From Ophelia neglecta (Eukaryota), in assembly GCA_965285935.1 (NCBI GenBank), contig OZ260661.1, positions 138,694,001-138,758,000 of the forward strand: a stretch of 64,000 bases of DNA, written 5' to 3'. Positions within the stretch are counted from its first letter, which is position 1. The number at the start of each line of letters is the position of its first letter. Shown here piece after piece: positions 641 through 49,300 of this stretch. The translations under genes were made by a program, and so were the position numbers. The notes beneath the pieces are model-generated. The model searched no databases and was not told where the DNA came from. It saw nothing but the letters and a program-made list of their open reading frames with translations.

Positions 641-3600
641 TTATGTATCTATAATTATTTTTAAATTATGTTCAAAACCTTTCACTAGAACAGTACTCTT
701 CTGTGAGTCAGCGTCGAAAATATTCTCATTGGTATGAAATGTTACTCTTAATTTGGACTCTTCCAGAGTTAAAGAACCATGCTGGAGCACATTGGCGGCA
801 TCTGTAAAAAAAATGTTGTACACGTTATAAAAAGCTCTAGTACCAAGAGTACTGAAAAGTACATAGATTTAGGGATAATACAAGGGCTTACTATACACTA
901 AGTTTCTGCCTTCTTCTACGATACCAAGAGGGTGACGCTGATTGGTTGATATACAGTAAAACCTGGGAATTGAGACCAACCAAGGGACTAGAAAATGATT
1001 ACCTGATGTTTGAGGTGGTCTGTTTAGACAGGTTCTTTTAACACTGAAAGTGTACACTTTGGTGTTCATATTAGTGGTCGGAATTGGCAGATGGTCTGAA
1101 TATAGAGGCGGTATTTTAGGAAGGTTTCACTGTTTACACAGTTAAGGATCCATCCGAGCAAAATTTGCCCCAATTTGCAGGTGGCCCTTCAGAGGACGGA
1201 CAGGACTGCCGACAATATCTATGTACCCGACAGCCAAGTCAGACGGACAAATTTTCTCCATGAAATGTTGTCAAAAAGCATAAAGTGGCCACTTGTATCA
1301 GGGAATAAAGGGAAGGAATGACAGTCCCCAACCACATTAAGCAGATGGCCGGCCATTCCAGGTATTTCTAATTATATATATATATATCTTTATTCGTACA
1401 AAAAACGTACACAAGGTGCAGGTAAATAAAGTCAGGTGCTACAATACAAATAACATCATAAACTAATCACCTATAGGTGGCCCAGTACACATTTGATAAA
1501 TGGCAAACTCAATTTCGTCATTTCTTAGAATGGAAAGACAATCGGTTCATTGAAAAAATGGTCAACCAGAGAGTGCCCATTACATTACTATACATTGCAG
1601 GGACTGCAGTAATCATTAACTATAACACTACTTTGCTTCAATAAACAGGATGCTCAGTTACCTTTGGGATCTATAAATGTAATTTTCGCTTCTGTGGAGC
1701 CCTCAGAACGCACTACTTCTTCAACGTCACCACCACCTGATCTCTTCTTGCTCTCAAAAAAGCAGGTAAGCGTTTCGTTAAGTGTTCGTTTATTGATTCC
1801 CTTCACCTTAATCACTTTTTGCGGTTCATTTGGCAGCTCTGGTTCTTCATTCACGTTATGAGTAGCTAAACAAGTTTTATCTGTGGTTAAATCAGTAGCA
1901 ACATTGTCACATTTGTGTTCATCATCTGAAAGTACAAAATACTAATTTAAGAAATGGCTCATGGTTGGGTGAGCTGAATAAGTCGTTATCAAAACGAGCT
2001 CGGTGAAAAGAATCTGTGACTTCTGAATCTGCAATTAAGAATGGTTTAAAATAGTATGTTCATATACTAGTATGCATGCAAAATATATCATGCTATATAA
2101 TTCCACTTCGAGGGTCCCTACTGATGAATTCGTGTTTATAGTAAGTGAAATAGTATTATGATGTTTAAGACCGAACAATGGTATATTCAGTAAACAACAA
2201 ATAATTGAGGTTCTATGACTTGATAGACCCATGAAGAAATTGTATAAAGTGCAACGGGAAACCTGAGCACTTTAAACATTTCATAAAGCTGGGAAACATT
2301 AGTAAAATCTGCTACATATTATAATTGATCTAAATTATGTCAGCATGGCTGTCCCCCTTTGTGGACTGGCCACCTGCCATCATTGGAAAAATTTGAATCC
2401 TCTTGTAATGGCTAGGCCTACTCGCTAACATGCAAGGGCGGCTTTCAACTAAGGGTACAGATTGACTTGGCTGGAACATCCTTCACATTGGAATCTCCAT
2501 GCAGGCAGTGATATCCATATATGGTCATAGTAATATTTGCAAGACCAAATACTAGCTTGATTATAGGCAAGATGAGATTTTAAAAATTTGGGACTGTTTG
2601 AGTCATTTTTAAAGTCCATTCGCACCCTTTTACTTTTTTTATGGAAAATTTAATCTTTAACCTTTCAAACTACTATTTTAAAAACTGTTAATTGGCACTC
2701 AGCAGATATATATTAATATGTAGGTACTGCTGGAATATCCGAGGGCATACAGTCCTCAGTAGCAACGGCGTATTGATGCTACAATGCTTTATAGTATCTT
2801 TCATCATGCCTTTTAACAAAATATAACATGGTAAATGCTTCCTCGGGATTGGCCAATCCACAATAGCTATGTTCTAATTATTGCACTTTTTTGTAAATAA
2901 AAAATAATTAATTGCACGTTCCAACAAGAATACAAGCAGCCATAGCATTCATTCCATTTTGATAATTAATGTATCATCTTGAAAACATTTCTCGGTATTT
3001 ATGTAATAACTTCCATAAGTTACAAAAAATGAAGCGAGACAAGAAATCATTCGAACATCAGTTGAGCATCAAAGAACACTTTAACTACCCATCTATATAT
3101 TACACATGTATGCCTACCTTTCACACTGTAAAGTAGTTCGACCGGTCTGAACCCCACATTATCAAAGGACTCCAAAGAGTCTTCTGGTTGACTGTATACT
3201 GCAGCTTTAGAATATGTAATAAAGCGTTAACAATATGATATATAAAATCATTGTAGTATCTGAAGCCAAAAGAGAAAATCGTTTTCTTTATACGCTCCAC
3301 ATCAATACCCATAGAAACTTCTTTTGGGTCATCCTTTGTGACATCAGGGTCCACAGTGTCTGGAGGGGTGTTTACTACAGCAATGACCTCGTCATTTTTG
3401 CTTCCGTCCTCGTCCGCATCTGCATATTATAGATAGCCAAACCAGTTAATTTGTAATTGTGGACCATGAAAGAAATAAGAACAAATGCTATCCGGGCATG
3501 TGAACCTTCCACCGGTTTAAGGACCAGATTGAATACACTTTTCGGACAAGTGAACAAGTTAGGTTCAGGCTGTTGATAACACATTGCTTGGTGAAATCCT

Positions 3601-6031
3601 TTGGTGTACAATGCTAGAGAGGTTAAATCGTTCGTTGTACTATTAGTTGATTGTTAGACTTACCATCTGCTTTCTGTGAGGTAATTACGGCTTTGTCTTC
3701 TGTGTACGAGATCTTTAAATGACCACTTCCACTGGATTCCATATTCTGAGTAGGGACTGCTGTAGTTTTTATGACTGGTCCTTTGACCTTCAATTAAAAT
3801 ATGATGTGTTATGCAATGTATTAAGAATTAATTGAAAACAGAAAAAAAAAAGTTTATACATATTCTCTTTGATTTATGTTAAAATTAGTTTTAAGAGATA
3901 TATCATTATGATACATATCAAATGACCAAATGATTGATTTTATACTCCCTGCCCCCTTTAAAATGCAAAGTATGTGTAAACCACTGGGTCATCAGTTATC
4001 ACACAAGTTTGAATCGCCTTGCGTATATTTTAAATCTAGGAATGTTGGGACGCAGTTGTTTGCATTAATGTATGTTTTTATAGTAATATGAACCTTTAAA
4101 TCTTATCAAATGCTTATATATAAATTGAAAACAAAAACATCTGTTTATACATATTCTCTTCGATATGCGTTAAAATCAATTTTTATGAAATATATCTTTA
4201 CGATAAATAACATATGACCAAATGGTTAGACACCCTCTCATACCCCCTTTCCCCGTTATAAAATACAAACTATTTGCAAACCACGGGATCACCAGGTATC
4301 ACACAGGTTTGAATATCGGCTGCCGTAAATTTTAATTATAGGAATCTTGCATTGTGTTTGTATTGATGGAAATGTGTGCATTAAATGTAAAATTGGCATT
4401 TAAATCTTATCAGAGTGCTTTACCTGCGTTGCAGAAGCATTAGTTTCATTTTTGTTGTCTTCCGTTGTCTGAGGCATATGCGCCCTAAATTTGCAAAAGG
4501 GTAAGCTTCCTACTGCTCTTCTGGCAGGGCCAGAATTACTAGATCCGCTTGCTGACGTACTTCCAGCAGCACTACCAGACTTACTGATCTTTTCCTCCAT
4601 TTGTCGTATTCTAGCTTGTACTACAATCGAATAAATGTGAAGGAAATGAGATAGGGAATACAAAAGGGCTTCCCTCAGAACCACTATATTGGAACATATA
4701 TATGGGGTGGGGTCAAATAGAGGTAAGTTTTGTTCTTGCCCATAATAGATAACTATGCATTCATTTGGCAAAGCTAGATGGTTAGGTGATTATTGGCTTG
4801 TCATGAACCATATGCTTCAGCGTTGCACAATGTTTAATAATATGTGTAATCATTTATGCAGTTATATAAATGGCTACACTTAGGACAGTGACAGCAGTTA
4901 ATTCCAATTTGACATATACGAATTTAATAAATATAAAGCAGAGCTGCTGCACGTTGAACTGACACTAGTAAGATTTTTTCTTAAATAATCAAAACAAAAT
5001 TTGTAAACAATATTACTCCACCTTAGACAGCTATGCACATGTCTACCTATCTAATGATGTTATGAACAATTGATGGAGCGATACAAAATTGAAATGAATG
5101 TCAAGGCCAGTGATGAAGTAATAATAAAATTTACAGTAGGTAGTTTCAGCGTCACTGACAATTTTTTTTCCAAACTAATAGAAATTATTATGCCACTGTG
5201 TTATTTTTCTCTGCTCTAATAAATACAGCCTTTACTGCAAATATATAAAATGCCGACATAATTCAGATATTTTGATGATGTGATTTCGTTTCAAAGCGGT
5301 GAAGACAAAGGAGGAACCCATATAAATGTACTTATTTTTGTGTTATTCTCGGTAAAGGGGGAGTTCAATAACACAACGTGAAGAGGAGATTGATATAATA
5401 TTAAAAGTTAAGTTCTTATATAAGTACATACCACTATTCACATTTAACTCAGTTGATCCTTCATTTATCTCTTTTCTTGATTGTCTTGTATTGACTCGGG
5501 AAACTTCCGCCACTGGGTCCCATGAGACAGCCTGCACACGAAATAAGTTAACTATTATATTTCTAAATATAATTATTATTAATTGAGTAATATTTGCATG
5601 TAGGATAAATATGAAAAAAGCAGTGAGTATGTTTTATGGAACTATTCAAAGCAAAACCCAACGCAATAACAACTGACAAATTCAATACGTCAATATAGTT
5701 CTGTAGTTCTGTCATACTAGCGCATGTTTGGAGAATGGAAAAAGTCCTTTTAATCGTAAATAAGCAAAATAATTATAAAAAAGTGTGTCGCCGTTTTTTT
5801 AGTAGACAAAAGAGAGATGTTTTAGAGATACTTTGGTCAAACAAATTTTTTATTTGACAGAAGACGGCTATAAACGTTTTACTCTTAAATATGCTTGAAC
5901 ATCTTTTCTCCCAAACATCCTTTAGACCCCATGCCCAGGTAGGTTATGCTACGTCCCTCACAAATATAGTGTTAACTGTATATTATTTAACTTACATTGT
6001 CGGGTTGTTTGAGAGATCGACCGTCAGCCAT
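641..6031 (-). CDS. Spliced gene: low-complexity N-terminus plus PARP14/PARP10/NMI-type RRM; apparently truncated (about 357 aa) or continuing off the window
   Basis: In-phase exons 5996-6031 (MADGRSLKQPDN), 5432-5531, 4424-4620, 3664-3787, 3309-3419, 3118-3198, 1662-1925 (VIKVKGI...FFESKKRSGGGDVEEV), 641-801; stop codon shortly after STVLVKGF. Confidence 0.72.
3830..4420. repeat. Imperfect tandem duplication, about 295-bp unit, intronic
   Basis: aattgaaaaca...tttatacatattctct...taaatcttatca occurs twice, starting near 3830 and 4123. Confidence 0.8.

Positions 6032-33528: not shown

Positions 33529-33531
<3 letters not shown>
31988..33531 (+). mobile_element. Ty3/Gypsy 3' fragment (RNase H and linker, deleted integrase) with 3' LTR
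   Basis: SRVLSKPERNYCVTRRELLAIV...VRTDHGAL...HRNADGLSR; PPT ggagggggg; LTR 33144-33531 (TG..CA, TATAAAA at 33281, AATAAA at 33457). Confidence 0.9.

Positions 33532-33590
<59 letters not shown>
33532..33590. repeat. (TA)n microsatellite abutting the Gypsy LTR
   Basis: Directly visible. Confidence 0.97.
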
Positions 33591-33593
<3 letters not shown>

Positions 33594-40300: not shown

Positions 40301-43300
40301 AAAACCTAGATACCTAACTATTTATAGTAAATCTTTATAACTGACCTTTTGCTTTTCTGATGACTTTAACTCTCGCCCCAGCACTGCCAATCTTGGTTTC
40401 TACCATTGCTTTGAAGTCTATCTTGAACTTGACACCATACTGCTCTGTCCATTCTATGTCAGGCATTTTAGAATCAAAAGCCTCCTCAATCTTAGAATTG
40501 ATTTCTTCTGGATATTCTTTGAAATCACCACTTTCCTCATAGTACCACTGAACCTATGATCAAATCAACTACCTGAATATTGACCACAGCAAGTACATGG
40601 CTTGATCGGAAACACATTAATGTAAAAACTTGTAGAACGAATGTAACAAATAGTTGTATGGCATTATTACCTATGTCTTTGCAATGCATACTTGTGTGGT
40701 TTATTAAAAGGATACACTAGAATTGCACAGATAGCCTGGTAGCCCCACCAATTTTACAATAATAAATGACAAACTGGTAAAGATCAAACAGTAAGTGAAC
40801 AAGGGCCCGCAGAGGCCAGGAGTCCCCTGCTGCAGGATCATGTATGAAAAGGTAAATGTCAATTGGTCATATTACTCATATAAGATGTTATCCTGGACCA
40901 AATAGTTTCAAGATTTGATAATTTTTAAAAAGTCGAAAATTTACCCAAAAGATCTGGTTCAAATAGGTCATAGGTCATTTTTTTATTGTTGCCATTGAAT
41001 TCCTTGACCTTAGTTTGGTAGTAGTAGTTGTTGTTGTTTGGGGTTTTACGTGGCTTTCAACACATATCGGTCATATGGCCACAGTGCCTACCTGTGACAG
41101 TGGGCTCAATGCCCTCTTTAGAGTGCTGCCTCACTGGAGTACCTGCTGTAGACACCAGACAGGGAACCCCAACCAGTCACATTATACTGACACCGGGTTG
41201 ACCAGTCCTGAAACTACCCCCGAAATACCGGGCGCCTGGCAGGGGAGCTTTCAGTACCTATTTTTACGTTTTAGGTTTGACGCGATCGAGCTTTGAACCC
41301 CGATCTACCACTTGCGAGGCGGACGCCCTAACCACTCGGCCACGCTTTGGTGGTATTTGTTAGGTAGTTTGGTAGTAGCAGACATATTATCATTAGCAAC
41401 AACTACTTGATATGAAAAAAAATATGTTTTTTTTTTAGTGGCTGCTGTAAATAACTTTGGAGATCTGCTCCGGAAACGAAAAGCAGGTCCGGAGGCCAAG
41501 GTTTAGGAGCCAAAGGTCAAAATATAGGTCATACACAGCATGCCAGTACCAAGGGGATATTTCACATGTAAGATGATTATCCTGGACCAAATAGTTTCAA
41601 GATAGGATAATTCTCCCTTTAAGGTCAAGGCCATACTGAAAGGTCAAATGTCACAGGTGTCTCAAAAAGGTTAAAAGGCACAAGGATGTAATATAAAAAC
41701 GCCATATGTGCTTTTGTGTGGCTACTATAAATAACTATGGAGATCTTCCTTGGAAATTAAATCAGCTCAAGAGGCCAAGGTTCAGGGGTCACAGGTCCAA
41801 AAATAGGTCATGTGCTGCATGCCAGTACCAAGATGATATCTTTCATGTAAGATGGTAACCCTGGATCAAATAGTTCCACATTTATGGCTCTGGACACTCT
41901 GTGTGTTGGCTGGCCGGATGGATGGTCAAGACCTAAACTAAGAGTCCCCCCCCTTCTTTTCGTGGGGTAGGGAACTAATAATGTATGGTATGTTTGAATT
42001 TACCAATTTACACTTTATTTGGGACATATACATTAGCTATTATTGGCATGTTTCATTAGGAACTACATAGAACTAAATGTGGACAGAAGTCGACGTGAAC
42101 AGTCGAGCGACACCTAGCGGGGTCGCCTGGATGCCTCCGCCAAGAAGTTAATTTGTGGACAAATGATTTTGGGAATAATTGGTCAGAAGCTAAAACATTT
42201 TATATGCCTTAATACATTTTATATGCCTATCTCCTACCTAGAAAGATTTGTCATTGAAAAATAAACCCAAGGTGAAAATCAACGATACCACTGCATTCCT
42301 TGTATACCATATCGTTTTAGTGTTCAAAACATTTTATATGCCCATCTCTCACCGTTAAGATGTGACCTTGATAAATAAACCCAAGGTGTAATTCAAGGAC
42401 ACCACTGGATTCCTTGTATAGGATTTCCTATTAGTGTTTTATACATATTATGTGCCTATCTCCCACCGATAAGCTTCCACAAGATCCCATGTTACTGCAT
42501 TTTTAAATTATTGCCCTCTGCGGCCATCTTGTTTTTCCGATCCCGACCAAAACCGTTTCAGCGCACGGCAATGCCCCATTGATGACTTCCCTGAAGTTTT
42601 GGAATAATCCCTGCATCCGTTCAAGAGATTTCGCGCGACATACAAACATTACCTGATCCATTGTGGCGGCTATCTTGCTTTTCCGATCGGTCAGAAAACA
42701 ATTTGTAATCATCTTCTACTAGCCATAACAAACTTCCATGAAGCCACAAGTGAATTCCTCGAAGCCCTGAGGAGTTATAGCGGTTAAAAGTTGGCACGGA
42801 CGGTTGGTTGGATGGTCGGTCGGACGGACGGACGGACAACCTGACTACATAATGCCTCCGGACCCTTCGGGGCGGAGGCATAAAAGTTGGGGGTGTGAGG
42901 TATAATACCTCAGGATTAAAACCATAATTTGAATTTTAAAGTAGTAAGCACCAATCAGCATTTCTTCCAGTGTGTCGGTCATGGGATATTAAAAACGTGT
43001 TGGCATATCACAATATTTAAGCCAATCACCTCAATTATATATTATTTTACTTTGAAAAATACTCCGCTATTTATGTCCTGCTTGAAATTTGTTAATTGTT
43101 TTTCTTTAGAATGGAGATGGTTGGGGATAGTGTGTTAAGTTCAGGGCGACAGTTTATAAGGATACTCCAATGACAAAGATCTTCATTTTAGGGAACGTGA
43201 GATGGGACCCCTATTTCATGGATTTTTGTATAATTCGAGCTTAGGGTTTCCCTTGATATAAATGTAAAGGTTGATATTCAAAGCGATCATACAAAGTTGG

Positions 43301-46300
43301 GAGTATGTTTGTGTGTGTGTTTGGGGGGGGGGGGGGGTCATAAACAATTTTATTTATAGAGTTAAACAATTGTTAACAAAGATGTGTCCTCTTGTGGGAT
43401 CACGAGTCATATCAGGTGGCTAAAATGTGTGTTAATTTCATCCTGCCTAAGTCCGATGATTATTGTATCATCAGCTGCACACATATTTTATTCCTTCTAA
43501 TGCACATGAAACATTAAATGCGGTCAAACTTGAGCATTATATTAGAATCACACCATAGCATTTCATGCAATGCTATTTCGACAGTTTTTCCAACTTTCGG
43601 TATGTTAACATTCATATTTTGTTTTTAACTGAAATGGAAGATCATGGCCAAATTGAGAAATGCATGTTTGCCTTTTGCTGCATATATCATTAACAGCTCC
43701 ATGCTAAAAATAATACCTTAAATCAATTTTCAACCAGTGAAACAATAGAATTGTAGATTCATGTCCAAACCACAGTCACTGATAGGTTTTTGAATCTATG
43801 AGTTCCTACATAATTGATTGTGTATTGGCATAGTCACTGGTCGTGTCCATGTACCAATCCAACGTGTCCATCCAATTAATGTATTCTCGGAAGTGAAAGG
43901 GGCGAAAGTGCTTGTATACAACTAAGAAACTTCTCCGAGGGGACTAGTCCAAACTATTTGCCCCGAGGGAGGTGACCAGTGAACTATTTCCCGAGACCGA
44001 AGGTCGAGGGAAATAGTTCACTGGTCTCCTCCCGAGGGGCAAATTGTTTGGACTAGTCCCCGAGGGGCAAGTTTATAGTTGTTTTATTATACATCATTGA
44101 AAAATCTTTGCACATTTAACATCTCTATTGGTTCTATGCTCTAGATAGATCTATAGATTGTTTTACCTATTGTTCCATTACTGCAATAAAAATGTACACC
44201 ATTATATGGAAAACAATAAATTTTATTTAAACAACCAGAAGTACCAGGTACAGCAGTCTGACTTCTCAATCACAGAATAAATTACTAGATATAATTCAAC
44301 AGTTTAATAAATTACAAATTAGCTATTGTAGTCATAAATAACAATAAATATTCTATAATAAATTACTAATTGAACAGTTTAATAAATTACCAATAAGTTA
44401 TTGAAGTGATAAATTACAATAAATATTATGTAATAAATTACTAATAGGTTATTAAATAGTGTGCCACTTTAACTTTTAGCCACTTATGCTGAGTAATTAT
44501 TGTTAATATTTATGTTCACCACACAGTCTTTAAATGACATCCCAGTGAGAGATGCATCCATTTTTTGGCGCTTTGACAAATGAACTGATTGTGTGTTTGG
44601 GGCATTGGCTGTGTTAATTATTGGGTTGATAACAATGTCTTCACAGATACTCTCAACAGCCACTTGATTTTCCCTTGCTAGCATAACACCTGTAGAGTCT
44701 TTTGGCATATTATTATCAAACAGATCATCTAAATCTAAAGGGCACATAATATCAAAATTGGGTTCCTGGGGCATAAAGTAAGGCTCCTGACGCACAAAGT
44801 TTGGTTCCATGGGCACAGAATTAGGGTCTTTGGACACAGAGTTAATTTCCTTGAGCACAGATTTATCAGGGTTCAATTTTTCTGATCCTGTGGCTGCACT
44901 TATCGCCCTGCTCATACGAAGCCTTGTGCCCTCCTCAATATGTCTGCTATAAGATCGAATTGAAGCTTCAGACTTGTGGCCAGACACCCCCATGATGTGC
45001 CTGGCTTCAAACCCATGGCTGTCCAGCATGGTAACTGATGTGGCCCTCAGGCAGTGGTTGGTATATTCATGTGACAATTCACATTGAATGGAAAGATGTT
45101 TCATTTTATTATACAGCATATTTTTACCCAAAGGCATATTGTCATACCAGATTGATGAATCCTGAAGTCTAGAACAGGGCCTTTGCCAAAAGTAAATACA
45201 ACTTGGGTTAAGTTTCTGCAAATATTTCTCAAAAGAAATAACAGGGCACTTGGGATCATCCGGAACTGCATACATTCTCCCTTGCTGGCTCTTTGTATCA
45301 TCCTCACCACGGTGATTTTTTGTGAGAGTGTCCTTTGTATACTTGACATATTTGTTCCCTGATGAATCTGTGAATACTTCCAAGTCACTTGCCTTCATTT
45401 CCCTTAAGTTTTCTCTGCCACGCTGACAAAGGTGAAGCATAATGTCGACAAATACTTTATTTTGGAGTCCTGTAGGGTTGCCAATGTCAAGCATGTTATG
45501 GTTATAAAGTTTTCTAAGGTCCTCACGCGTGAGCGGCTCCTTGTGGTTGACATCAGCTTTGCCCTGCTGCTTCAAGTTTACTACTACACCAGCAAACACA
45601 TCGTTGGCAGGCTTGAACTGTGGGTCATTAATAATGTCAATACCTCGTTTCTTGAGAAAACTCTGTTGTATTCCATACCGGATTGTACTAAGGGATTTCT
45701 TCGTATATAGAGATCCGTCCATCTTTCTGGCTTCTGCATAAAATTTAGCCAGCACACTAACAAGGTCGCTGTCTGACATTTCGTCAATACGTGAGATGAG
45801 TTTTTCATTGCAATATGCTTGCAAAACATTTGTTCCGTTTTTTATTACATCTTTGGTCTTCTTTGCGTGTCTATTATCAACTAGATTTTCTACTTCTTGA
45901 TCACTCAATGCTGCAAACCTTGCCATTATCAGATTATTCAGCTGTTATTGATGTTCCGGGATCCCGCCGCGTTTGTTTTACGTTCGAAGTAGAGCTATGC
46001 GCATGGTTTCGTATTTATTGAACCCGCGTTTTCGGCAACATAGTCCAATTTTAAACGTGCAAATATATTTGAATAATGTATATTCTTATTTATTATCTTA
46101 CTTTTTATAAACATGAAACAATTGACTGTAGTTTGTTTGGAAAATACTAATACGACAATAAAAATGGTGGTTTCGTTAGTGAAGTGCGTAAATTAGCCAC
46201 ACGAGGCCGCCACTGCTAGCCATGCGCTAGTTTCACGAACTAGTCCCCGGGACTAGTTCGTGAAACTAGCGTACGGCTGGGAAACTAGGCGATTCTAACC

Positions 46301-49300
46301 AACACCATTCAGCCAATCACAGGGCGGGATTTTTCAATGATGTATAATAATAAAAACTGGCATATGTTATGTTTGTTGCAGATATCATTACATGCAACAA
46401 TAGTTTAATGACTGACATAGCTATTGGTATAAGATTGGTTTTGCTATCACTTCTATTTTAGGGAACAAAGATCGTGTCTGTTGGTTATATTGCCTATAAA
46501 AGGTGACATATCAAGTGTTCGTAAAATATTGAAACAATGAGATTAATTCAGAACACTTGTGTTCATAGTTATGCAGTAAAGAAATAAAGCAGATAACAGA
46601 GCTTACCTGTTTTTTGATCAAGACAGTCTTTGATTTTGCATGTTTTTTTCTATTATTTTCCATAAATATTGCATATATTTTTTCCACAACAGACGATATG
46701 TCATCAGAGATTCCCTGCAGACGGATCCGCTTGACCTTTGGTCTATTTTCAATTGTTATTTTCACCCCATATGTTTGGTCAAGACTCTGAATTCTGGCAA
46801 TCTGCATATGAAATTCAAGAATATAGTATAAACACATTTTCATTGTAAAGCGAGTTCTAAAAACACAAAAAAAGAATTCAAATATTTTCAAAAATGGCAT
46901 CATGGTAGTGTGTCGTTTGAATACCTGTGTTTCATCAAGTTTAGCAATGTTTTCCTGATCAGCTTCCTTGTCCATGACCTTGTCCTTACTCTCATCATCA
47001 CACACATCCTCTATCTCTTTTATGGCTGCGTCTATCTCCACCATAGTTCTTGCACACACACGCAGTTTGGTCACTGGTGCAGGAGATGGAAGGACCTTCA
47101 ATGCCGGGAGCCGCACATTTGGTTCAAGTGACTGAGTGGGTATGTCTACATCAGTCAAACTACTATAGAGCCCAGCTAAATAAAAATGTTGTTACTTAGA
47201 CGGCTACTTAACCACAGAAAGCTAATCATAAACAAATATCACAAGGAACTGTATTAAATAGATAGTTAAGATCGTTATTTTAGCATACATGTCATCCGGC
47301 CCCTTCAGCTTCTCTTTAAACAAAAAAAGACAGAAAAAATTGCCAATCACTCATTTTCAACATAACTTTGGCAACAAAACATAATCCGTTTTCCACCATA
47401 CGTCAATATAATCATGTTAAGCCTATGAGGCTTCCTCCCTGTCCATGTCCACACCGACAATTAAACTATTAAAGAGGTTAATAGAAATGTTTGTTTGAAA
47501 ATTCCCTGCTGAAGAATTCAAAAACTGGAAAACGCCAAAGCATGCAGTTTACTTTAGACTCTCAATGTGTTTTAGCATTGTAGCTGCTAAACTATGATCA
47601 GCAAAGTGACATAAGTGATTTGATGTTCATGATTTTTTAGGGCGTGCGGTATATTGGTGGGTCGACATCAACGCAGCCCGACATAGTCATTAGTGCCCAA
47701 AGGAGAGCCGAGGGTGCTATTTACTATGAAAGGCTGATGCTCTTTGAAGACGGGCCACAAATAAACTGCAGTGCCCCCAAAGAATTCATGTTACTACTAT
47801 TATTATCATCTTCCGCTGCCGATGATGACTAATAAAGACGCAACCTATTTTAAGCAACTGAAACTTAATTTTCACTACTAGCAACGGGCCGACAATGAAC
47901 ATGAACATTCTATGACATAGACATTCGAGGCGGGTCTGATACTGAAGTGAGGCAGCACTATAAAAAGGCAATCGAGCTTACTGTCACAAGTAGGCAGCGT
48001 GGCCGTATTACCGATAAGTGTTGAAAGCCACGTAAAAACCCCAAACAACCAACCAACCTGAGTCTCAATTTGACCCCAAGGCACCCAAGGTCAAATTTGA
48101 GGTCCCTACTGGTTTTCTTGTATATGATTTCCTATCAATGTTCAATACATTTTGATATGCCTATCTCGCACCGTCAGGCCTTAACAAGATGGCATTTTTT
48201 ACCATAGAAAATGATTTCCCTTGGCGGCTATTTTGTTACGATTGGCCCAAAACATTTTTTTCTGGTCAGGGCAATTGTCCATCGAGGATTCCCATGAAGT
48301 TACAAAATTATTCCCACAACGGTTCAAAGACATCACATCCTGAACAAATCCTTACCAACAAACCATGTCAGCCACCTTGTTTTTTATCGCGCCGATTAAC
48401 TCGACTATTTATGCAAAAATTTATCCAATGAAGAAGCAAATACATTGTAATACATCGCAATTCTTGACTTATAGCTTATAGGCTTGGACTTGGACAAGTG
48501 AAGGAAAGAAGACGGAAGAACGTCCTGACTACATAATGCTTCCGGTTCCTTCAGGGCGGAGGCATAGATAACATGTTAATGTACAGAAATATAGGCTAAA
48601 CATGGTGTTAAAAATGATTAAAACAAATATGACATCTTGATTTATGATATTAAGTGTACAGTAAATTATTATTTCATGTTAATTGAGATACTTAAATAGC
48701 AGATTCTCTTTGATAAGTAAACTTATCAATACATATATATATATATACCTGCAGTGGCCACACTTCTCGGAAGAACTGCCTTCTTTGGGGCTGGCGTTCC
48801 GTCTACCAACTCAACCTCACTGTTTCCAAGAATAGACTGCAGACTTTTGTGGAATTGAGCCATTGTTCTTTGCTGGTTGTCAACCAAATATACTTTTCGC
48901 AGTTTAGTGGCTTCTTTCTGATTCTCGCAGTAGTCTTTGATTGCACTTACAATGGTATTGGTGGATATGTGTAGGGGAACTCCAAACACTCCAGCACTGA
49001 GGGCTGGTATACCTACCGAGTCCAACCTTTTCTCAACGGTAAGTGTTAAGCATTGATATATTGCCTCATAAATAAGGTTGATTTCATTCCGATGGCCTCC
49101 CTGCCACACTGGGCCAACAGCATGGAGAACATGTTTACATGGTAGCTTGCCGGCACTTGAGACAAATACTTGACCCTCCAGCATTGTGCCTCCTGATCTT
49201 ATCTTAGTATCACATTCTGTCTGTATTGAGTACCCACCTGAAATACAAATATAAAAAAATGTTTTCCCAGTTGTGTAAACTATGAAGGGGAATGCAAAGA

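What the first reader, a model, noticed from the sequence alone, without database searches (positions are those of the whole stretch)
43916..46352. Intact eukaryotic tyrosine-recombinase element with an internal copy complementary to its own circle junction
Seen: 46328-46350 (gatttttcaatgatgtataataa, the right end) is the exact reverse complement of 44084-44106. The adjacent 44064-44081 pairs imperfectly with the left end (caactaagaaactt..., from 43919). An ATA trinucleotide lies at both ends (43916-18, 46350-52). Joining the ends through ATA gives ...tgtataataaTAcaacta..., which pairs with 44076-44106 with one mismatch at the crossover. Established: DIRS-1 retrotransposons have an internal complementary region matching their joined ends, and CTX phage attP(+) and integron attC are folded single-strand substrates for tyrosine recombinases. 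Cryptons are usually described only as having short terminal direct repeats. Inference: this RT-less element may move as a single-stranded circle whose junction folds into a duplex recombination site. The 480-aa ORF retains all catalytic residues, so it may still be active. I cannot confirm novelty without a search.
Basis: partly seen in the sequence, partly recalled or inferred. Interest (0 to 1): 0.9.

Follow-up and report, generated by a model that had tools for sequence, protein, structure and literature searches.

The report
Crypton transposon with junction-completing hairpin
This is a young, probably still mobile tyrosine-recombinase ("Crypton") DNA transposon whose two ends, once joined in a circle, pair with an internal stretch to make one long hairpin; I found the same design in related elements of oysters, scallops, sea urchins and starfish, although animal Cryptons are described as having no terminal repeats.

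Summary
Window 46328-46350 is the exact reverse complement of 44084-44106. The left end (43918-43998) pairs with 44002-44082. The 480-aa ORF is an intact Crypton-type tyrosine recombinase (YR).

The ATA crossover is wrong. A paralogous empty site, 38 independent insertions and a tandem dimer define a 2,436-bp element (43915-46350) with no obligatory duplication. Its joined ends read TAATAA|TATACA, 2 nt longer than the internal copy, so the crossover lies beside a small bubble.

Results beyond the finding:
- The same layout occurs in two other families of this genome (26-36% protein identity) and in oyster, scallop, sea urchin and starfish elements. The end sequences differ, but the hairpin tip is conserved.
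- Arm mismatches are mostly tandem G·A, and the loop is C-GAA-G on one strand only. This points to folding of that strand.
- Targets are a dyad with a 6-bp spacer. All 38 insertions cross at its left edge, so only one strand's exchange is recovered.

A single-stranded circle remains untested; I put a folded-strand mechanism at about 45%. I class it as a new variant of a known kind.

Another note of this scan on other DNA of this genome (s1-733716) describes a tandem dimer whose junction completes a palindrome.

The parts
43911..43914 (+). Left half-site of the target (CTTG here; consensus M-T-A-K)
   Evidence: Present in the paralogous empty site L073. Logo of 38 insertions: -6 C/A, -5 T 32/38, -4 A 36/38, -3 G/T.
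43915..46350 (.). The element, 2,436 bp. It can equally be written 43917-46352, because the target happens to start with TA.
   Evidence: Contig joint 43914->46351 skips 2,436 nt with 2 ambiguous letters. Empty paralog. Copy ends.
43915..43920 (+). TATACA: the element's crossover (spacer) region, always found at the left junction
   Evidence: Constant in 38 of 38 insertions, while the six bases after the right end vary with the target. The same motif sits at the corresponding end of the urchin, starfish and bivalve elements.
43918..43998 (+). Distal hairpin arm; it runs to the left end
43999..44001 (+). Loop GAA closed by C:G (C-GAA-G on the + strand, TTC on the other strand)
   Evidence: The same loop is found in families B and D and in the oyster, scallop and starfish elements.
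44002..44082 (+). Proximal hairpin arm. Together with the distal arm it holds six CGAG and no CTCG.
44084..44106 (+). Internal copy exactly complementary to the right end. With 44002-44082 it forms an ICR-like segment that pairs with the joined ends.
44141..44154 (+). Internal sequence that fits the target consensus (CTAG ATAGAT CTAT). In locus L022 another copy is inserted at this site.
44222..45906 (.). Segment missing from the abundant ~750-bp non-autonomous derivative
   Evidence: Joint 44218->45907 in all three runs. BLAST pieces 200-506 and 2192-2637 of the query.
44292..44441 (+). Two 75-bp tandem repeats downstream of the ORF
44484..45926 (-). Tyrosine recombinase gene, 480 aa, no intron needed
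   Evidence: Pfam DUF3504 2e-10, Phage_integrase 2e-6, QRICH1 6e-6. Catalytic residues invariant. The model matches QRICH1 and Cre.
46216..46288 (+). Second palindrome (46218-46278) carrying six CTAG spaced 11-19 nt apart; candidate accessory binding sites
   Evidence: CTAG is the target half-site motif. This segment is kept in the non-autonomous copies.
46313..46317 (+). CCAAT box upstream of the gene (likely promoter element)
   Evidence: Read from the sequence. A CCAAT/ATTGG box also lies next to the same end of family B. Inference only.
46328..46350 (+). Right end, ending ...ATAA at the crossover
46351..46360 (+). Target spacer (TAAAAA) and right half-site (CTGG; consensus H-T-R-K)
   Evidence: Empty paralog. 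Logo: +8 T 36/38, +9 A/G 36/38.

Best explanation
Window 43915-46350 is an autonomous copy of a young CryptonA-type DNA transposon. It has one gene, a tyrosine recombinase (YR) with both Cre-like domains, and cis-acting ends.

Shown:
- Layout. Read from the gene-upstream end, the element is X ... X' Y' loop Y. X' is the complement of end X, and Y'/Y are the arms of a hairpin that runs to the other end. Joining the ends therefore completes a palindrome with ~105-nt arms.
- Conservation. This layout is kept in divergent relatives.
- Target. The target is a dyad, M-T-A-K, 6 bp, H-T-R-K.
- Crossover. Every insertion is joined at the left edge of that spacer, ...ATAA|TATACA... in the element. The left junction carries the element's spacer and the right junction carries the target's.

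Inferred:
- Only one strand is exchanged. By the known polarity of tyrosine recombinases this is the window's + strand. The intermediate is then finished by replication.
- The internal complement works within that same strand. It folds with the two ends, bringing them together for circle closure. It also presents the joined site as a hairpin duplex with an unpaired bubble at the cut. This resembles integron attC sites and the CTX phage attP(+) site.
- The element may travel as a free single-stranded circle, or the fold may form by extrusion from duplex DNA. Neither is shown.
For: Identity:
- Pfam DUF3504, Phage_integrase and QRICH1.
- R-K-H-R-H-Y invariant in 10 relatives.
- Fold matches to QRICH1 and Cre.
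- No other ORF in the 2.4 kb.

Mobility:
- Three full copies and more than 45 derivatives of ~750 bp, 97-100% identical, with identical ends and different flanks.
- An empty paralogous site.

Layout conserved with different sequences:
- Family B: 17/17 complement, 68-nt arms.
- Family D: 11/12 complement, and the gene is inverted relative to the structure.
- Oyster 14/14, scallop 12/12, sea urchin 14/14, starfish 20/21.

Folding of one strand:
- The loop is TTC/GAA in six of seven elements.
- On the GAA strand 32 of 71 arm mismatches are G·A against 3 C·T. Most are tandem in a C-GA-G context, and one pair always sits 5-6 nt from the tip.
- Family A has six CGAG and no CTCG inside the hairpin.
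- C-GAA-G mini-hairpins and CGAG blocks are unusually stable DNA folds (PMC13037366, PMC10085684).

One-strand exchange:
- In 38 of 38 insertions the left junction has TATACA and the right junction has the target's six bases. The reciprocal class expected from a two-strand exchange with unlike spacers was never seen (query starts).
- The target prefers T and A at the first two spacer bases, matching the element's.

Bubble and fold energy:
- The internal copy is 2 nt shorter than the junction in families A and D, and 5 nt shorter in B, exactly at the crossover.
- The junction folds at -98.5 kcal/mol, z = -23.
Against: - No circular molecule, single-stranded or double-stranded, was seen. The only runs are contigs from one DNA sample, and they show no go-back joint other than what the genomic dimer would give.
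- Nearest-neighbour energies of the two strands differ little (-98.5 against -96.3 kcal/mol). The strand asymmetry therefore rests on published stabilities of G·A motifs, not on my computation.
- A one-strand exchange finished by replication also works with a duplex circle.
- The CGAG motifs could be directional protein sites rather than pairing elements.
- Eight of 12 loci from other species showed no such layout. These are single copies of unknown age.
- The ends of families B and D and of the foreign elements are less firmly placed than those of family A.
Confidence: 0.45

Rival explanations
1. The same Crypton transposon, but the structure works only in duplex DNA. A double-stranded circle is excised, as in the classical Goodwin model. 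The palindrome is a symmetric platform of binding sites for the recombinase or host factors, or it extrudes as a cruciform under supercoiling. The single crossover position arises because unlike spacers block the second exchange, and the Holliday junction is then finished by replication or by host resolvases.
For: - Cryptons are modelled as double-stranded circles (PMC3212892).
- The joined ends form an ordinary core site: 7-8-bp inverted arms around a short spacer.
- The target is an ordinary duplex dyad with a 6-bp spacer.
- CTAG half-site motifs are enriched and phased in the retained ends, as accessory sites would be.
- The two strands fold with nearly equal computed energy.
Against: - A symmetric duplex platform should carry CGAG in one arm and CTCG in the other. 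Instead all six are CGAG, and the G·A bias recurs in every family.
- The loop is conserved as C-GAA-G in six of seven elements, although a loop has no role in unextruded duplex DNA.
- The internal copy is imperfect exactly at the crossover, so it is not a second working core.
Confidence: 0.3
2. The element is copied through RNA, like DIRS-1. A transcript lacking the extreme ends is reverse-transcribed by an enzyme supplied by another element. The internal complement then acts as a splint to rebuild and join the ends before the recombinase integrates the circle.
For: - The layout is formally that of the DIRS-1 internal complementary region: 88 nt matching 33 + 55 nt of the two ends. That region is essential for DIRS-1 retrotransposition through single-stranded cDNA (PMC7192593).
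- Other notes of this scan report DIRS-order elements in this genome (not checked by me).
Against: - There is no reverse transcriptase in the 2.4 kb, and the recombinase is of the Crypton/DUF3504 type.
- In family D the gene is inverted relative to the structure, which does not fit a message that is also the template.
- Stable mismatches between arm and end persist in all copies, so the ends are not re-templated from the internal copy at each round.
- There is no poly(A) tail or other retro-copy mark at the ends.
Confidence: 0.1
3. The hairpin serves something other than recombination. It could be an origin or priming site for second-strand synthesis, a transcription terminator, or a source of hairpin RNA that regulates the element. 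Its complementarity to the ends would then be secondary.
For: - GCGAAGC-type mini-hairpins mark complementary-strand origins of single-stranded DNA phages (PMC13037366).
- In families A and B and in four foreign elements the hairpin lies downstream of the gene.
Against: - In family D the hairpin lies upstream of the gene, so the structure keeps its position relative to the ends rather than to the gene.
- The complement starts exactly at the end of the element and covers the crossover in every family.
- A priming role would itself presuppose a single-stranded intermediate.
Confidence: 0.1
4. Chance, or an unrelated palindromic repeat that happens to lie next to the recombinase gene.
For: None found.
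Against: - The 23-nt exact match and the 81-nt arms are far beyond chance.
- All copies carry the hairpin inside the same boundaries.
- The layout recurs in unrelated sequence in seven elements.
Confidence: 0.01

Closest known systems
CryptonA elements (Kojima and Jurka 2011, PMC3212892; Glomhopper 2026, PMC13465315)
   Same: - A single tyrosine-recombinase gene of the DUF3504 type and no reverse transcriptase.
- Non-autonomous deletion derivatives outnumber the autonomous copy.
- There is no true target duplication, only microhomology.
   Different: Animal Cryptons were reported to have no terminal repeats, direct or inverted. The 2026 study found no repeats either. Here the ends are tied to a conserved internal complement plus hairpin, and the target and crossover are defined to the base.
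DIRS-1 internal complementary region (Cappello model; PMC7192593)
   Same: An internal segment is complementary to both extremities placed side by side, so the circle junction pairs with it. A tyrosine recombinase integrates the product.
   Different: - There is no reverse transcriptase, Gag, RNase H or methyltransferase, and no long inverted terminal repeats.
- One end is itself the hairpin partner of the internal segment.
- The internal copy is shorter than the junction at the crossover.
Integron attC sites and CTX phage attP(+) (my own knowledge: Bouvier 2005, MacDonald 2006, Val 2005)
   Same: - The site is an imperfect hairpin of one strand with unpaired bases at the crossover.
- Only one strand is exchanged, and replication completes the event.
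- No duplication is made, and little homology with the target is needed.
   Different: - Those systems are bacterial, and their folded substrates are proven.
- The arms here are 70-105 nt, against about 20-60 nt.
- The enzyme here is encoded by the element itself, and single-strandedness is only inferred.
IS200/IS605 'peel and paste' elements (PMC5027513, title and abstract only)
   Same: One specific strand would be excised as a circle, guided by subterminal hairpins and linked to replication.
   Different: Those use an HUH Y1 transposase with different chemistry, not a Cre-like tyrosine recombinase.
Strand-biased circularising integrative elements of Vibrio (PMC9345347, title and abstract only)
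   Same: Tyrosine-recombinase elements that circularise one strand preferentially.
   Different: They are bacterial and multi-gene. I did not compare their ends.

Membership tests
Crypton (CryptonA group) | Encodes a tyrosine recombinase with the catalytic R-H-R-Y residues and no reverse transcriptase | tested here: met
   R169, K203, H291, R294, H317 and Y326 are invariant. Pfam Phage_integrase 27.9 bits against a cut-off of 27.1. The fold matches Cre, Xer and lambda Int. It is the only long ORF in the 2.4 kb.
Crypton (CryptonA group) | Recombinase domain of the DUF3504 type, related to KIAA1958/ZMYM/QRICH1 | tested here: met
   DUF3504 41 bits against a cut-off of 29.7. Relatives are named KIAA1958-like or ZMYM2-like. 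The best structural match is QRICH1.
Crypton (CryptonA group) | Repeated mobile unit with fixed ends, no TIRs or LTRs, and at most short microhomology with the target | tested here: met
   More than 45 copies share the ends. Empty site found. 0-5 nt of shared bases at the junctions. The subterminal complement is an addition to the published description.
DIRS order (DIRS-1-like) | Reverse transcriptase/RNase H (and usually Gag and methyltransferase) beside the recombinase | tested here: not met
   No such ORF. No Pfam hit other than recombinase families.
DIRS order (DIRS-1-like) | Internal region complementary to both extremities | tested here: met
   44002-44106 pairs with 46328-46350 joined to 43915-43998.
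DIRS order (DIRS-1-like) | Long inverted terminal repeats | tested here: not met
   The two ends are not inverted copies of each other.
Folded single-strand recombination sites (attC, CTX attP(+)) | Imperfect hairpin with unpaired bases at the crossover | tested here: met
   A 4-by-2-nt internal loop at TAATAA|TATACA in the fold of the dimer junction. The same shortfall is seen in families B and D.
Folded single-strand recombination sites (attC, CTX attP(+)) | Only one strand exchanged | tested here: inconclusive
   38 of 38 insertions belong to one class. This is indirect evidence from products.
Folded single-strand recombination sites (attC, CTX attP(+)) | The substrate is single-stranded DNA in vivo | not testable with these tools
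   Only contigs of one DNA sample were on hand.
Tn916/CTnDOT-type conjugative transposons | Variable coupling sequences carried from the previous site | tested here: not met
   The six bases at the right junction are present in the empty site, and the element's TATACA is constant.

The most novel reading that the evidence does not exclude
A widespread clade of animal Cryptons moves by exchanging a single DNA strand. That strand folds on an internal complement of its own joined ends, so that a hairpin rather than a duplex is the recombination site. This would be a eukaryotic counterpart of integron cassettes and CTX phage. It would also make the DIRS internal complementary region an inheritance from such recombinase-only ancestors rather than an invention for reverse transcription.
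Probability: 0.3. Interest if true: 0.9.

Novelty: new variant of a known kind. Interest (0 to 1): 0.76.

Why it matters
How Cryptons move has never been shown. Since 2003 they have been drawn as double-stranded circles with 'short direct repeats', and animal Cryptons were reported to have no terminal repeats at all.

This finding gives base-level ends, a target logo, an empty site, a genomic copy of the circle junction, and a conserved cis structure shared by at least two phyla besides the host. Together these turn the mechanism into a set of direct experiments: folded strand against duplex, one strand against two.

It also links RT-less Cryptons to the one structural hallmark of DIRS-1 retrotransposons, which bears on which came first. 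Crypton recombinases gave rise to the vertebrate genes KCTD1, KIAA1958, ZMYM2-4 and QRICH1. Knowing what DNA shape the ancestral enzyme recognised may help in understanding those proteins. A small, self-contained recombinase with a defined short target may also interest tool builders.

Tried and rejected
- ATA as overlap or duplication: rejected.
- A 2,434-bp element with the left TA coming from the target: rejected. The target then resembles the junction poorly, and the empty site plus the logo fit 2,436 bp.
- Tn916-like coupling sequences: rejected.
- The hairpin as a separate palindromic repeat, or true TIRs at 44079-44106 / 46328-46355 with the hairpin outside the element: rejected, because all copies start at 43915.
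- The second core in the internal copy being used for integration, which would invert the body relative to the ends: no such copy among those listed.
- Reads for circle junctions or expression: only three runs of one sample, kept as contigs, with no RNA. No go-back joint was listed.
- Sequence search of solved structures: nothing useful.
- Energy difference between the strands: too small to use.
- Layout not detected in single loci of Amphiura, Limulus, Mytilus, Oculina, Diadema antillarum and a second oyster family. Diadema setosum was ambiguous: a 21-nt inverted repeat beside a (TA)n run. One look-up returned no DNA.
- Families C (L043/L044), L046 and L052 of this genome: boundaries could not be set from one or two copies.
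- A target logo for family B could not be made.
- Literature searches for Crypton with hairpin, palindrome or internal complementary region found no prior description. Repbase entries could not be consulted.

Full report
**1. What is in the sequence**

Window 46328-46350 is the exact reverse complement of 44084-44106. Directly before that internal copy lies a hairpin. Arms 43918-43998 and 44002-44082 are 81 nt long and 83% complementary, with a 3-nt loop. As single-stranded DNA it folds at -75 kcal/mol, z = -14.7 against shuffles.

Between these features lies one long ORF, 44484-45926 on the minus strand, 480 aa. A scan of the whole 64-kb window finds no other hairpin with an adjacent stretch complementary to a distant site.

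**2. The gene**

- Pfam gives DUF3504 (2e-10), Phage_integrase (2e-6) and QRICH1 (6e-6).
- 264 relatives were found, the best at 50-58% identity. Named ones come from sea urchins, a brittle star, oysters, scallops, corals and a horseshoe crab. They are usually labelled KIAA1958-like or ZMYM2-like.
- In an alignment of ten of them, including two other families of this genome, R169, K203, H291, R294, H317 and Y326 are invariant. These are the catalytic residues of tyrosine recombinases (YRs).
- An AlphaFold model is confident for residues ~20-345 and disordered after 349. It matches human QRICH1 (a Crypton-derived domain) and Cre recombinase over both domains, then Xer, Tn1549 integrase, the integron integrase and lambda integrase.

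This is a Crypton-type recombinase of the CryptonA group, as defined by Kojima and Jurka (PMC3212892).

**3. Copies, ends and empty site**

A DNA search of the window's own genome (762 Mb) gave the following:
- The window copy.
- An identical copy 57 kb away with identical flanks, which is a recent segmental duplication.
- A third full-length copy on another chromosome, whose ORF is split near residue 320.
- More than 45 copies of ~750 bp, 97-100% identical. They keep window 43915-44221 and 45907-46352.

Contigs from public runs show the same deletion joint at about ten times the depth of the internal part.

All copies begin with T-ATA-CAACT and end with ...GTATAATAA. Only 13 of 30 have ATA after the right end, so ATA is not a general overlap.

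An older paralog of the flanking segment (L073) is empty. It reads ...TTTG, then TAAAAA, then CTGG. The same joint, skipping 2,436 nt, appears in one run's contigs.

A head-to-tail dimer on another chromosome (L031) shows the joined ends directly...TAATAA followed by TATACAACT.

The element is therefore 43915-46350, 2,436 bp, and inserts without an obligatory duplication.

**4. Target and crossover**

Thirty-eight independent insertions give a clear logo.
- Left of the element: C/A, T (32/38), A (36/38), G/T.
- Right of the element: six weakly constrained bases, of which the first is T in 22 and the second A in 23.
- Then: not-G, T (36/38), A/G (36/38), T/G.

This is a dyad of two four-base half-sites around a 6-bp spacer, the usual form of a tyrosine-recombinase core. 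The crossover sits at the left edge of the spacer.

The element's junction has ATAA on the left of the cut and TATACA as its own spacer. In all 38 insertions the left junction carries the element's TATACA and the right junction carries the target's six bases.

If both strands were exchanged six bases apart, the unlike spacers would give heteroduplexes. About half of the progeny would then show the reciprocal arrangement. None does, and no left end in the BLAST table starts later than expected.

Coupling sequences of the Tn916 kind are excluded, because the six bases at the right junction are present in the empty site.

I infer that only one strand's exchange gives rise to the insertions that are recovered, and that replication or repair completes them. 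Tyrosine recombinases cut each strand at the 5' edge of the spacer. By that known polarity the exchanged strand is the window's + strand.

**5. The layout is conserved**

A protein search of the same genome found further families.

| Element | Protein identity to the window ORF | Gene-upstream end X and its internal complement X' | Hairpin |
|---|---|---|---|
| Family B (L039), ~1.96 kb, more than 40 short derivatives | 36% | 1132-1148 is 100% complementary to 2923-2939 | Starts 4 nt after X'; 68-nt arms, 91%, 3-nt loop; outer arm runs to the other end at 3091 |
| Family D (L048) | 26% | 880-891 matches 3360-3371 at 11/12 | 3374-3474, reaching the end at 3481; here the gene is inverted relative to the structure |

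Outside this genome, four single loci fetched around relatives show the same order:

| Species | Locus | End/internal match | Arms | Loop |
|---|---|---|---|---|
| Magallana gigas (oyster) | L053 | 14/14 | not measured | 3 nt |
| Argopecten irradians (scallop) | L061 | 12/12 | 70 nt | 3 nt |
| Lytechinus variegatus (sea urchin) | L059 | 14/14 | ~75 nt | 8 nt |
| Patiria miniata (starfish) | L080 | 20/21 | 58 nt or more | 3 nt |

Eight other loci showed nothing clear. They are single copies of unknown age, some with introns, so this says little.

The end sequences differ between families. What recurs is:
- the order of parts;
- a TATACA-like start at the hairpin end;
- ...TAA at the other end in the three families of this genome;
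- the tip of the hairpin.

That refutation fails.

**6. Signs that one strand folds**

- When every element is written from X to Y, the loop is TTC in six of seven. The other strand therefore reads C-GAA-G.
- On that strand, 32 of the 71 arm mismatches are G·A or A·G against 3 C·T. Most are tandem in the context C-GA-G, and one such pair always sits 5-6 nt from the loop.
- In the window copy the hairpin holds six CGAG and no CTCG, although the motifs lie in opposite arms.
- Published work shows that GCGAAGC-type mini-hairpins are extraordinarily stable, with a sheared G·A closing a one-base loop. They mark complementary-strand origins of single-stranded DNA phages, whereas TTC loops are ordinary (PMC13037366).
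- Published work also shows that CGAG opposite CGAG forms a stable block of two sheared G·A pairs (PMC10085684).
- A palindrome that only had to offer symmetric duplex binding sites would carry CGAG in one arm and CTCG in the other.
- The strand favoured by these motifs is the window's + strand. This is the same strand that section 4 identifies as exchanged.

The standard energy model does not capture these motifs. It gives -98.5 and -96.3 kcal/mol for the two strands of the dimer junction, so this argument rests on the cited biophysics.

**7. The bubble**

The internal copy is not a perfect complement of the joined ends.
- In family A it lacks 2 nt exactly at the crossover. The fold has four junction bases (TATA) facing two.
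- Family D also lacks 2 nt, and family B lacks 5 nt.
- The stem on the X side is perfect: 23 bp in family A.

The cut therefore lies between a perfect duplex and a small unpaired region. This is the arrangement known from integron attC sites and the CTX phage attP(+) site, where it limits the reaction to one strand (my own knowledge of that literature).

**8. Proposed mechanism (shown and inferred steps)**

Shown:
- the identity of the enzyme;
- the ends, the target and the single crossover position;
- the layout and its conservation;
- the strand-biased mismatches;
- recent activity.

Inferred:
- When the + strand is unpaired, for instance at a replication fork, the hairpin forms within the left end, and the right end pairs with 44084-44106.
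- This puts the two cut sites side by side. The recombinase cuts that strand at both ends and joins them.
- The product is a circle whose junction is already a hairpin duplex. The flanks are resealed.
- The folded site then recombines with a duplex target dyad by one strand exchange, helped by pairing of the first two spacer bases.
- Replication fixes the insertion.

I give the folded-strand version 45%. A duplex-only version of the same transposon gets 30%. An RNA route with a borrowed reverse transcriptase gets 10%. A role of the hairpin outside recombination gets 10%.

**9. Comparison with what is known**

By all tested criteria the element is a member of CryptonA. It is not a DIRS element: it has no reverse transcriptase and no inverted terminal repeats.

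The literature held here describes Cryptons as lacking terminal inverted repeats. For animal Cryptons it states that no terminal repeats, direct or inverted, were found, even among 50 copies of one family (PMC3212892). A 2026 study of DUF3504 Cryptons in fungi also found no repeats (PMC13465315). The term 'internal complementary region' appears there only for DIRS.

Three full-text searches found no description of this layout in Cryptons. I could not consult Repbase.

The DIRS-1 internal region (88 nt, matching 33 + 55 nt of the ends) is essential for retrotransposition and is thought to splint single-stranded cDNA (PMC7192593). The present elements show the same geometry without reverse transcription.

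I class the finding as a new variant of a known kind.

**10. Limits**

- No circle and no RNA were observed.
- Only family A has an empty site and a large set of insertions.
- The ends of the foreign elements are placed by analogy.
- The host species was not identified. It is an invertebrate animal with roughly eight large chromosomes.

Noticed in passing
window 43300-46552; G000:C1:138794552-138797803; G000:C1:138881396-138882020 (L073): The segment holding the element is present three times on the chromosome. Two copies are 100% identical and lie 57 kb apart, both with the element. An older copy (89% identity) lacks it. The insertion therefore dates between the two duplications.
   Followed up: partly
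L031 (G000:C5:35689359-35690946, minus strand); G000:C1:112683728-112684577: Head-to-tail tandem dimers of the short derivatives occur in family A and, by coordinates, in family B. They preserve the circle junction in the chromosome. Another first-reader note (s1-733716) seems to describe such a dimer.
   Followed up: partly
L022 (G000:C2:117112232-117113412): One copy is inserted into another copy at the internal site equal to window 44141-44154. That site fits the target consensus, so the element carries its own preferred target.
   Followed up: partly
window 46216-46288: Six CTAG motifs lie 11-19 nt apart inside a second palindrome near the gene-upstream end. CTAG runs at 12 per kb in the retained ends against 2.1 per kb in the window. 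ACTAGT occurs four times (43943, 44052, 46239, 46252).
   Followed up: partly
alignment A1, last ~15 residues (window ORF residues ~463-475): After a long disordered tail, the Crypton proteins share a short C-terminal motif (aromatic, x, x, C, x, hydrophobic, N, hydrophobic). The model predicts it as a small beta hairpin. Its function is unknown.
   Followed up: no
L070 (G000:C1:20053600-20058800): This is the place of another first-reader note (s1-732107). It holds a 490-aa ORF at 2308-3780, an array of 45-bp tandem repeats (1540-2227) and two identical 201-bp direct repeats (644-844, 1357-1557). It has no hairpin layout and may be a recombinase-only element of the split-direct-repeat kind.
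   Followed up: partly
window 33531-33592: A perfect palindrome with 31-nt arms and no loop, unrelated to the element.
   Followed up: no
window 46511-47158 (-): A 215-aa ORF starts 160 bp beyond the right end of the element. It was not examined.
   Followed up: no
L054 (Diadema setosum) 3679-3770 and 5585-5605: The recombinase gene is flanked by a 21-nt perfect inverted repeat. One arm abuts a long (TA)n run that lies where the hairpin would be. Either the hairpin has been replaced by a self-complementary microsatellite, or this lineage has simple TIRs.
   Followed up: partly
window 44027 and 44074: The window's full-length copy differs from the majority of copies at two places in the proximal arm: T instead of A at 44027, and one C missing after 44074. 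Its hairpin is therefore slightly less regular than that of the short derivatives.
   Followed up: partly
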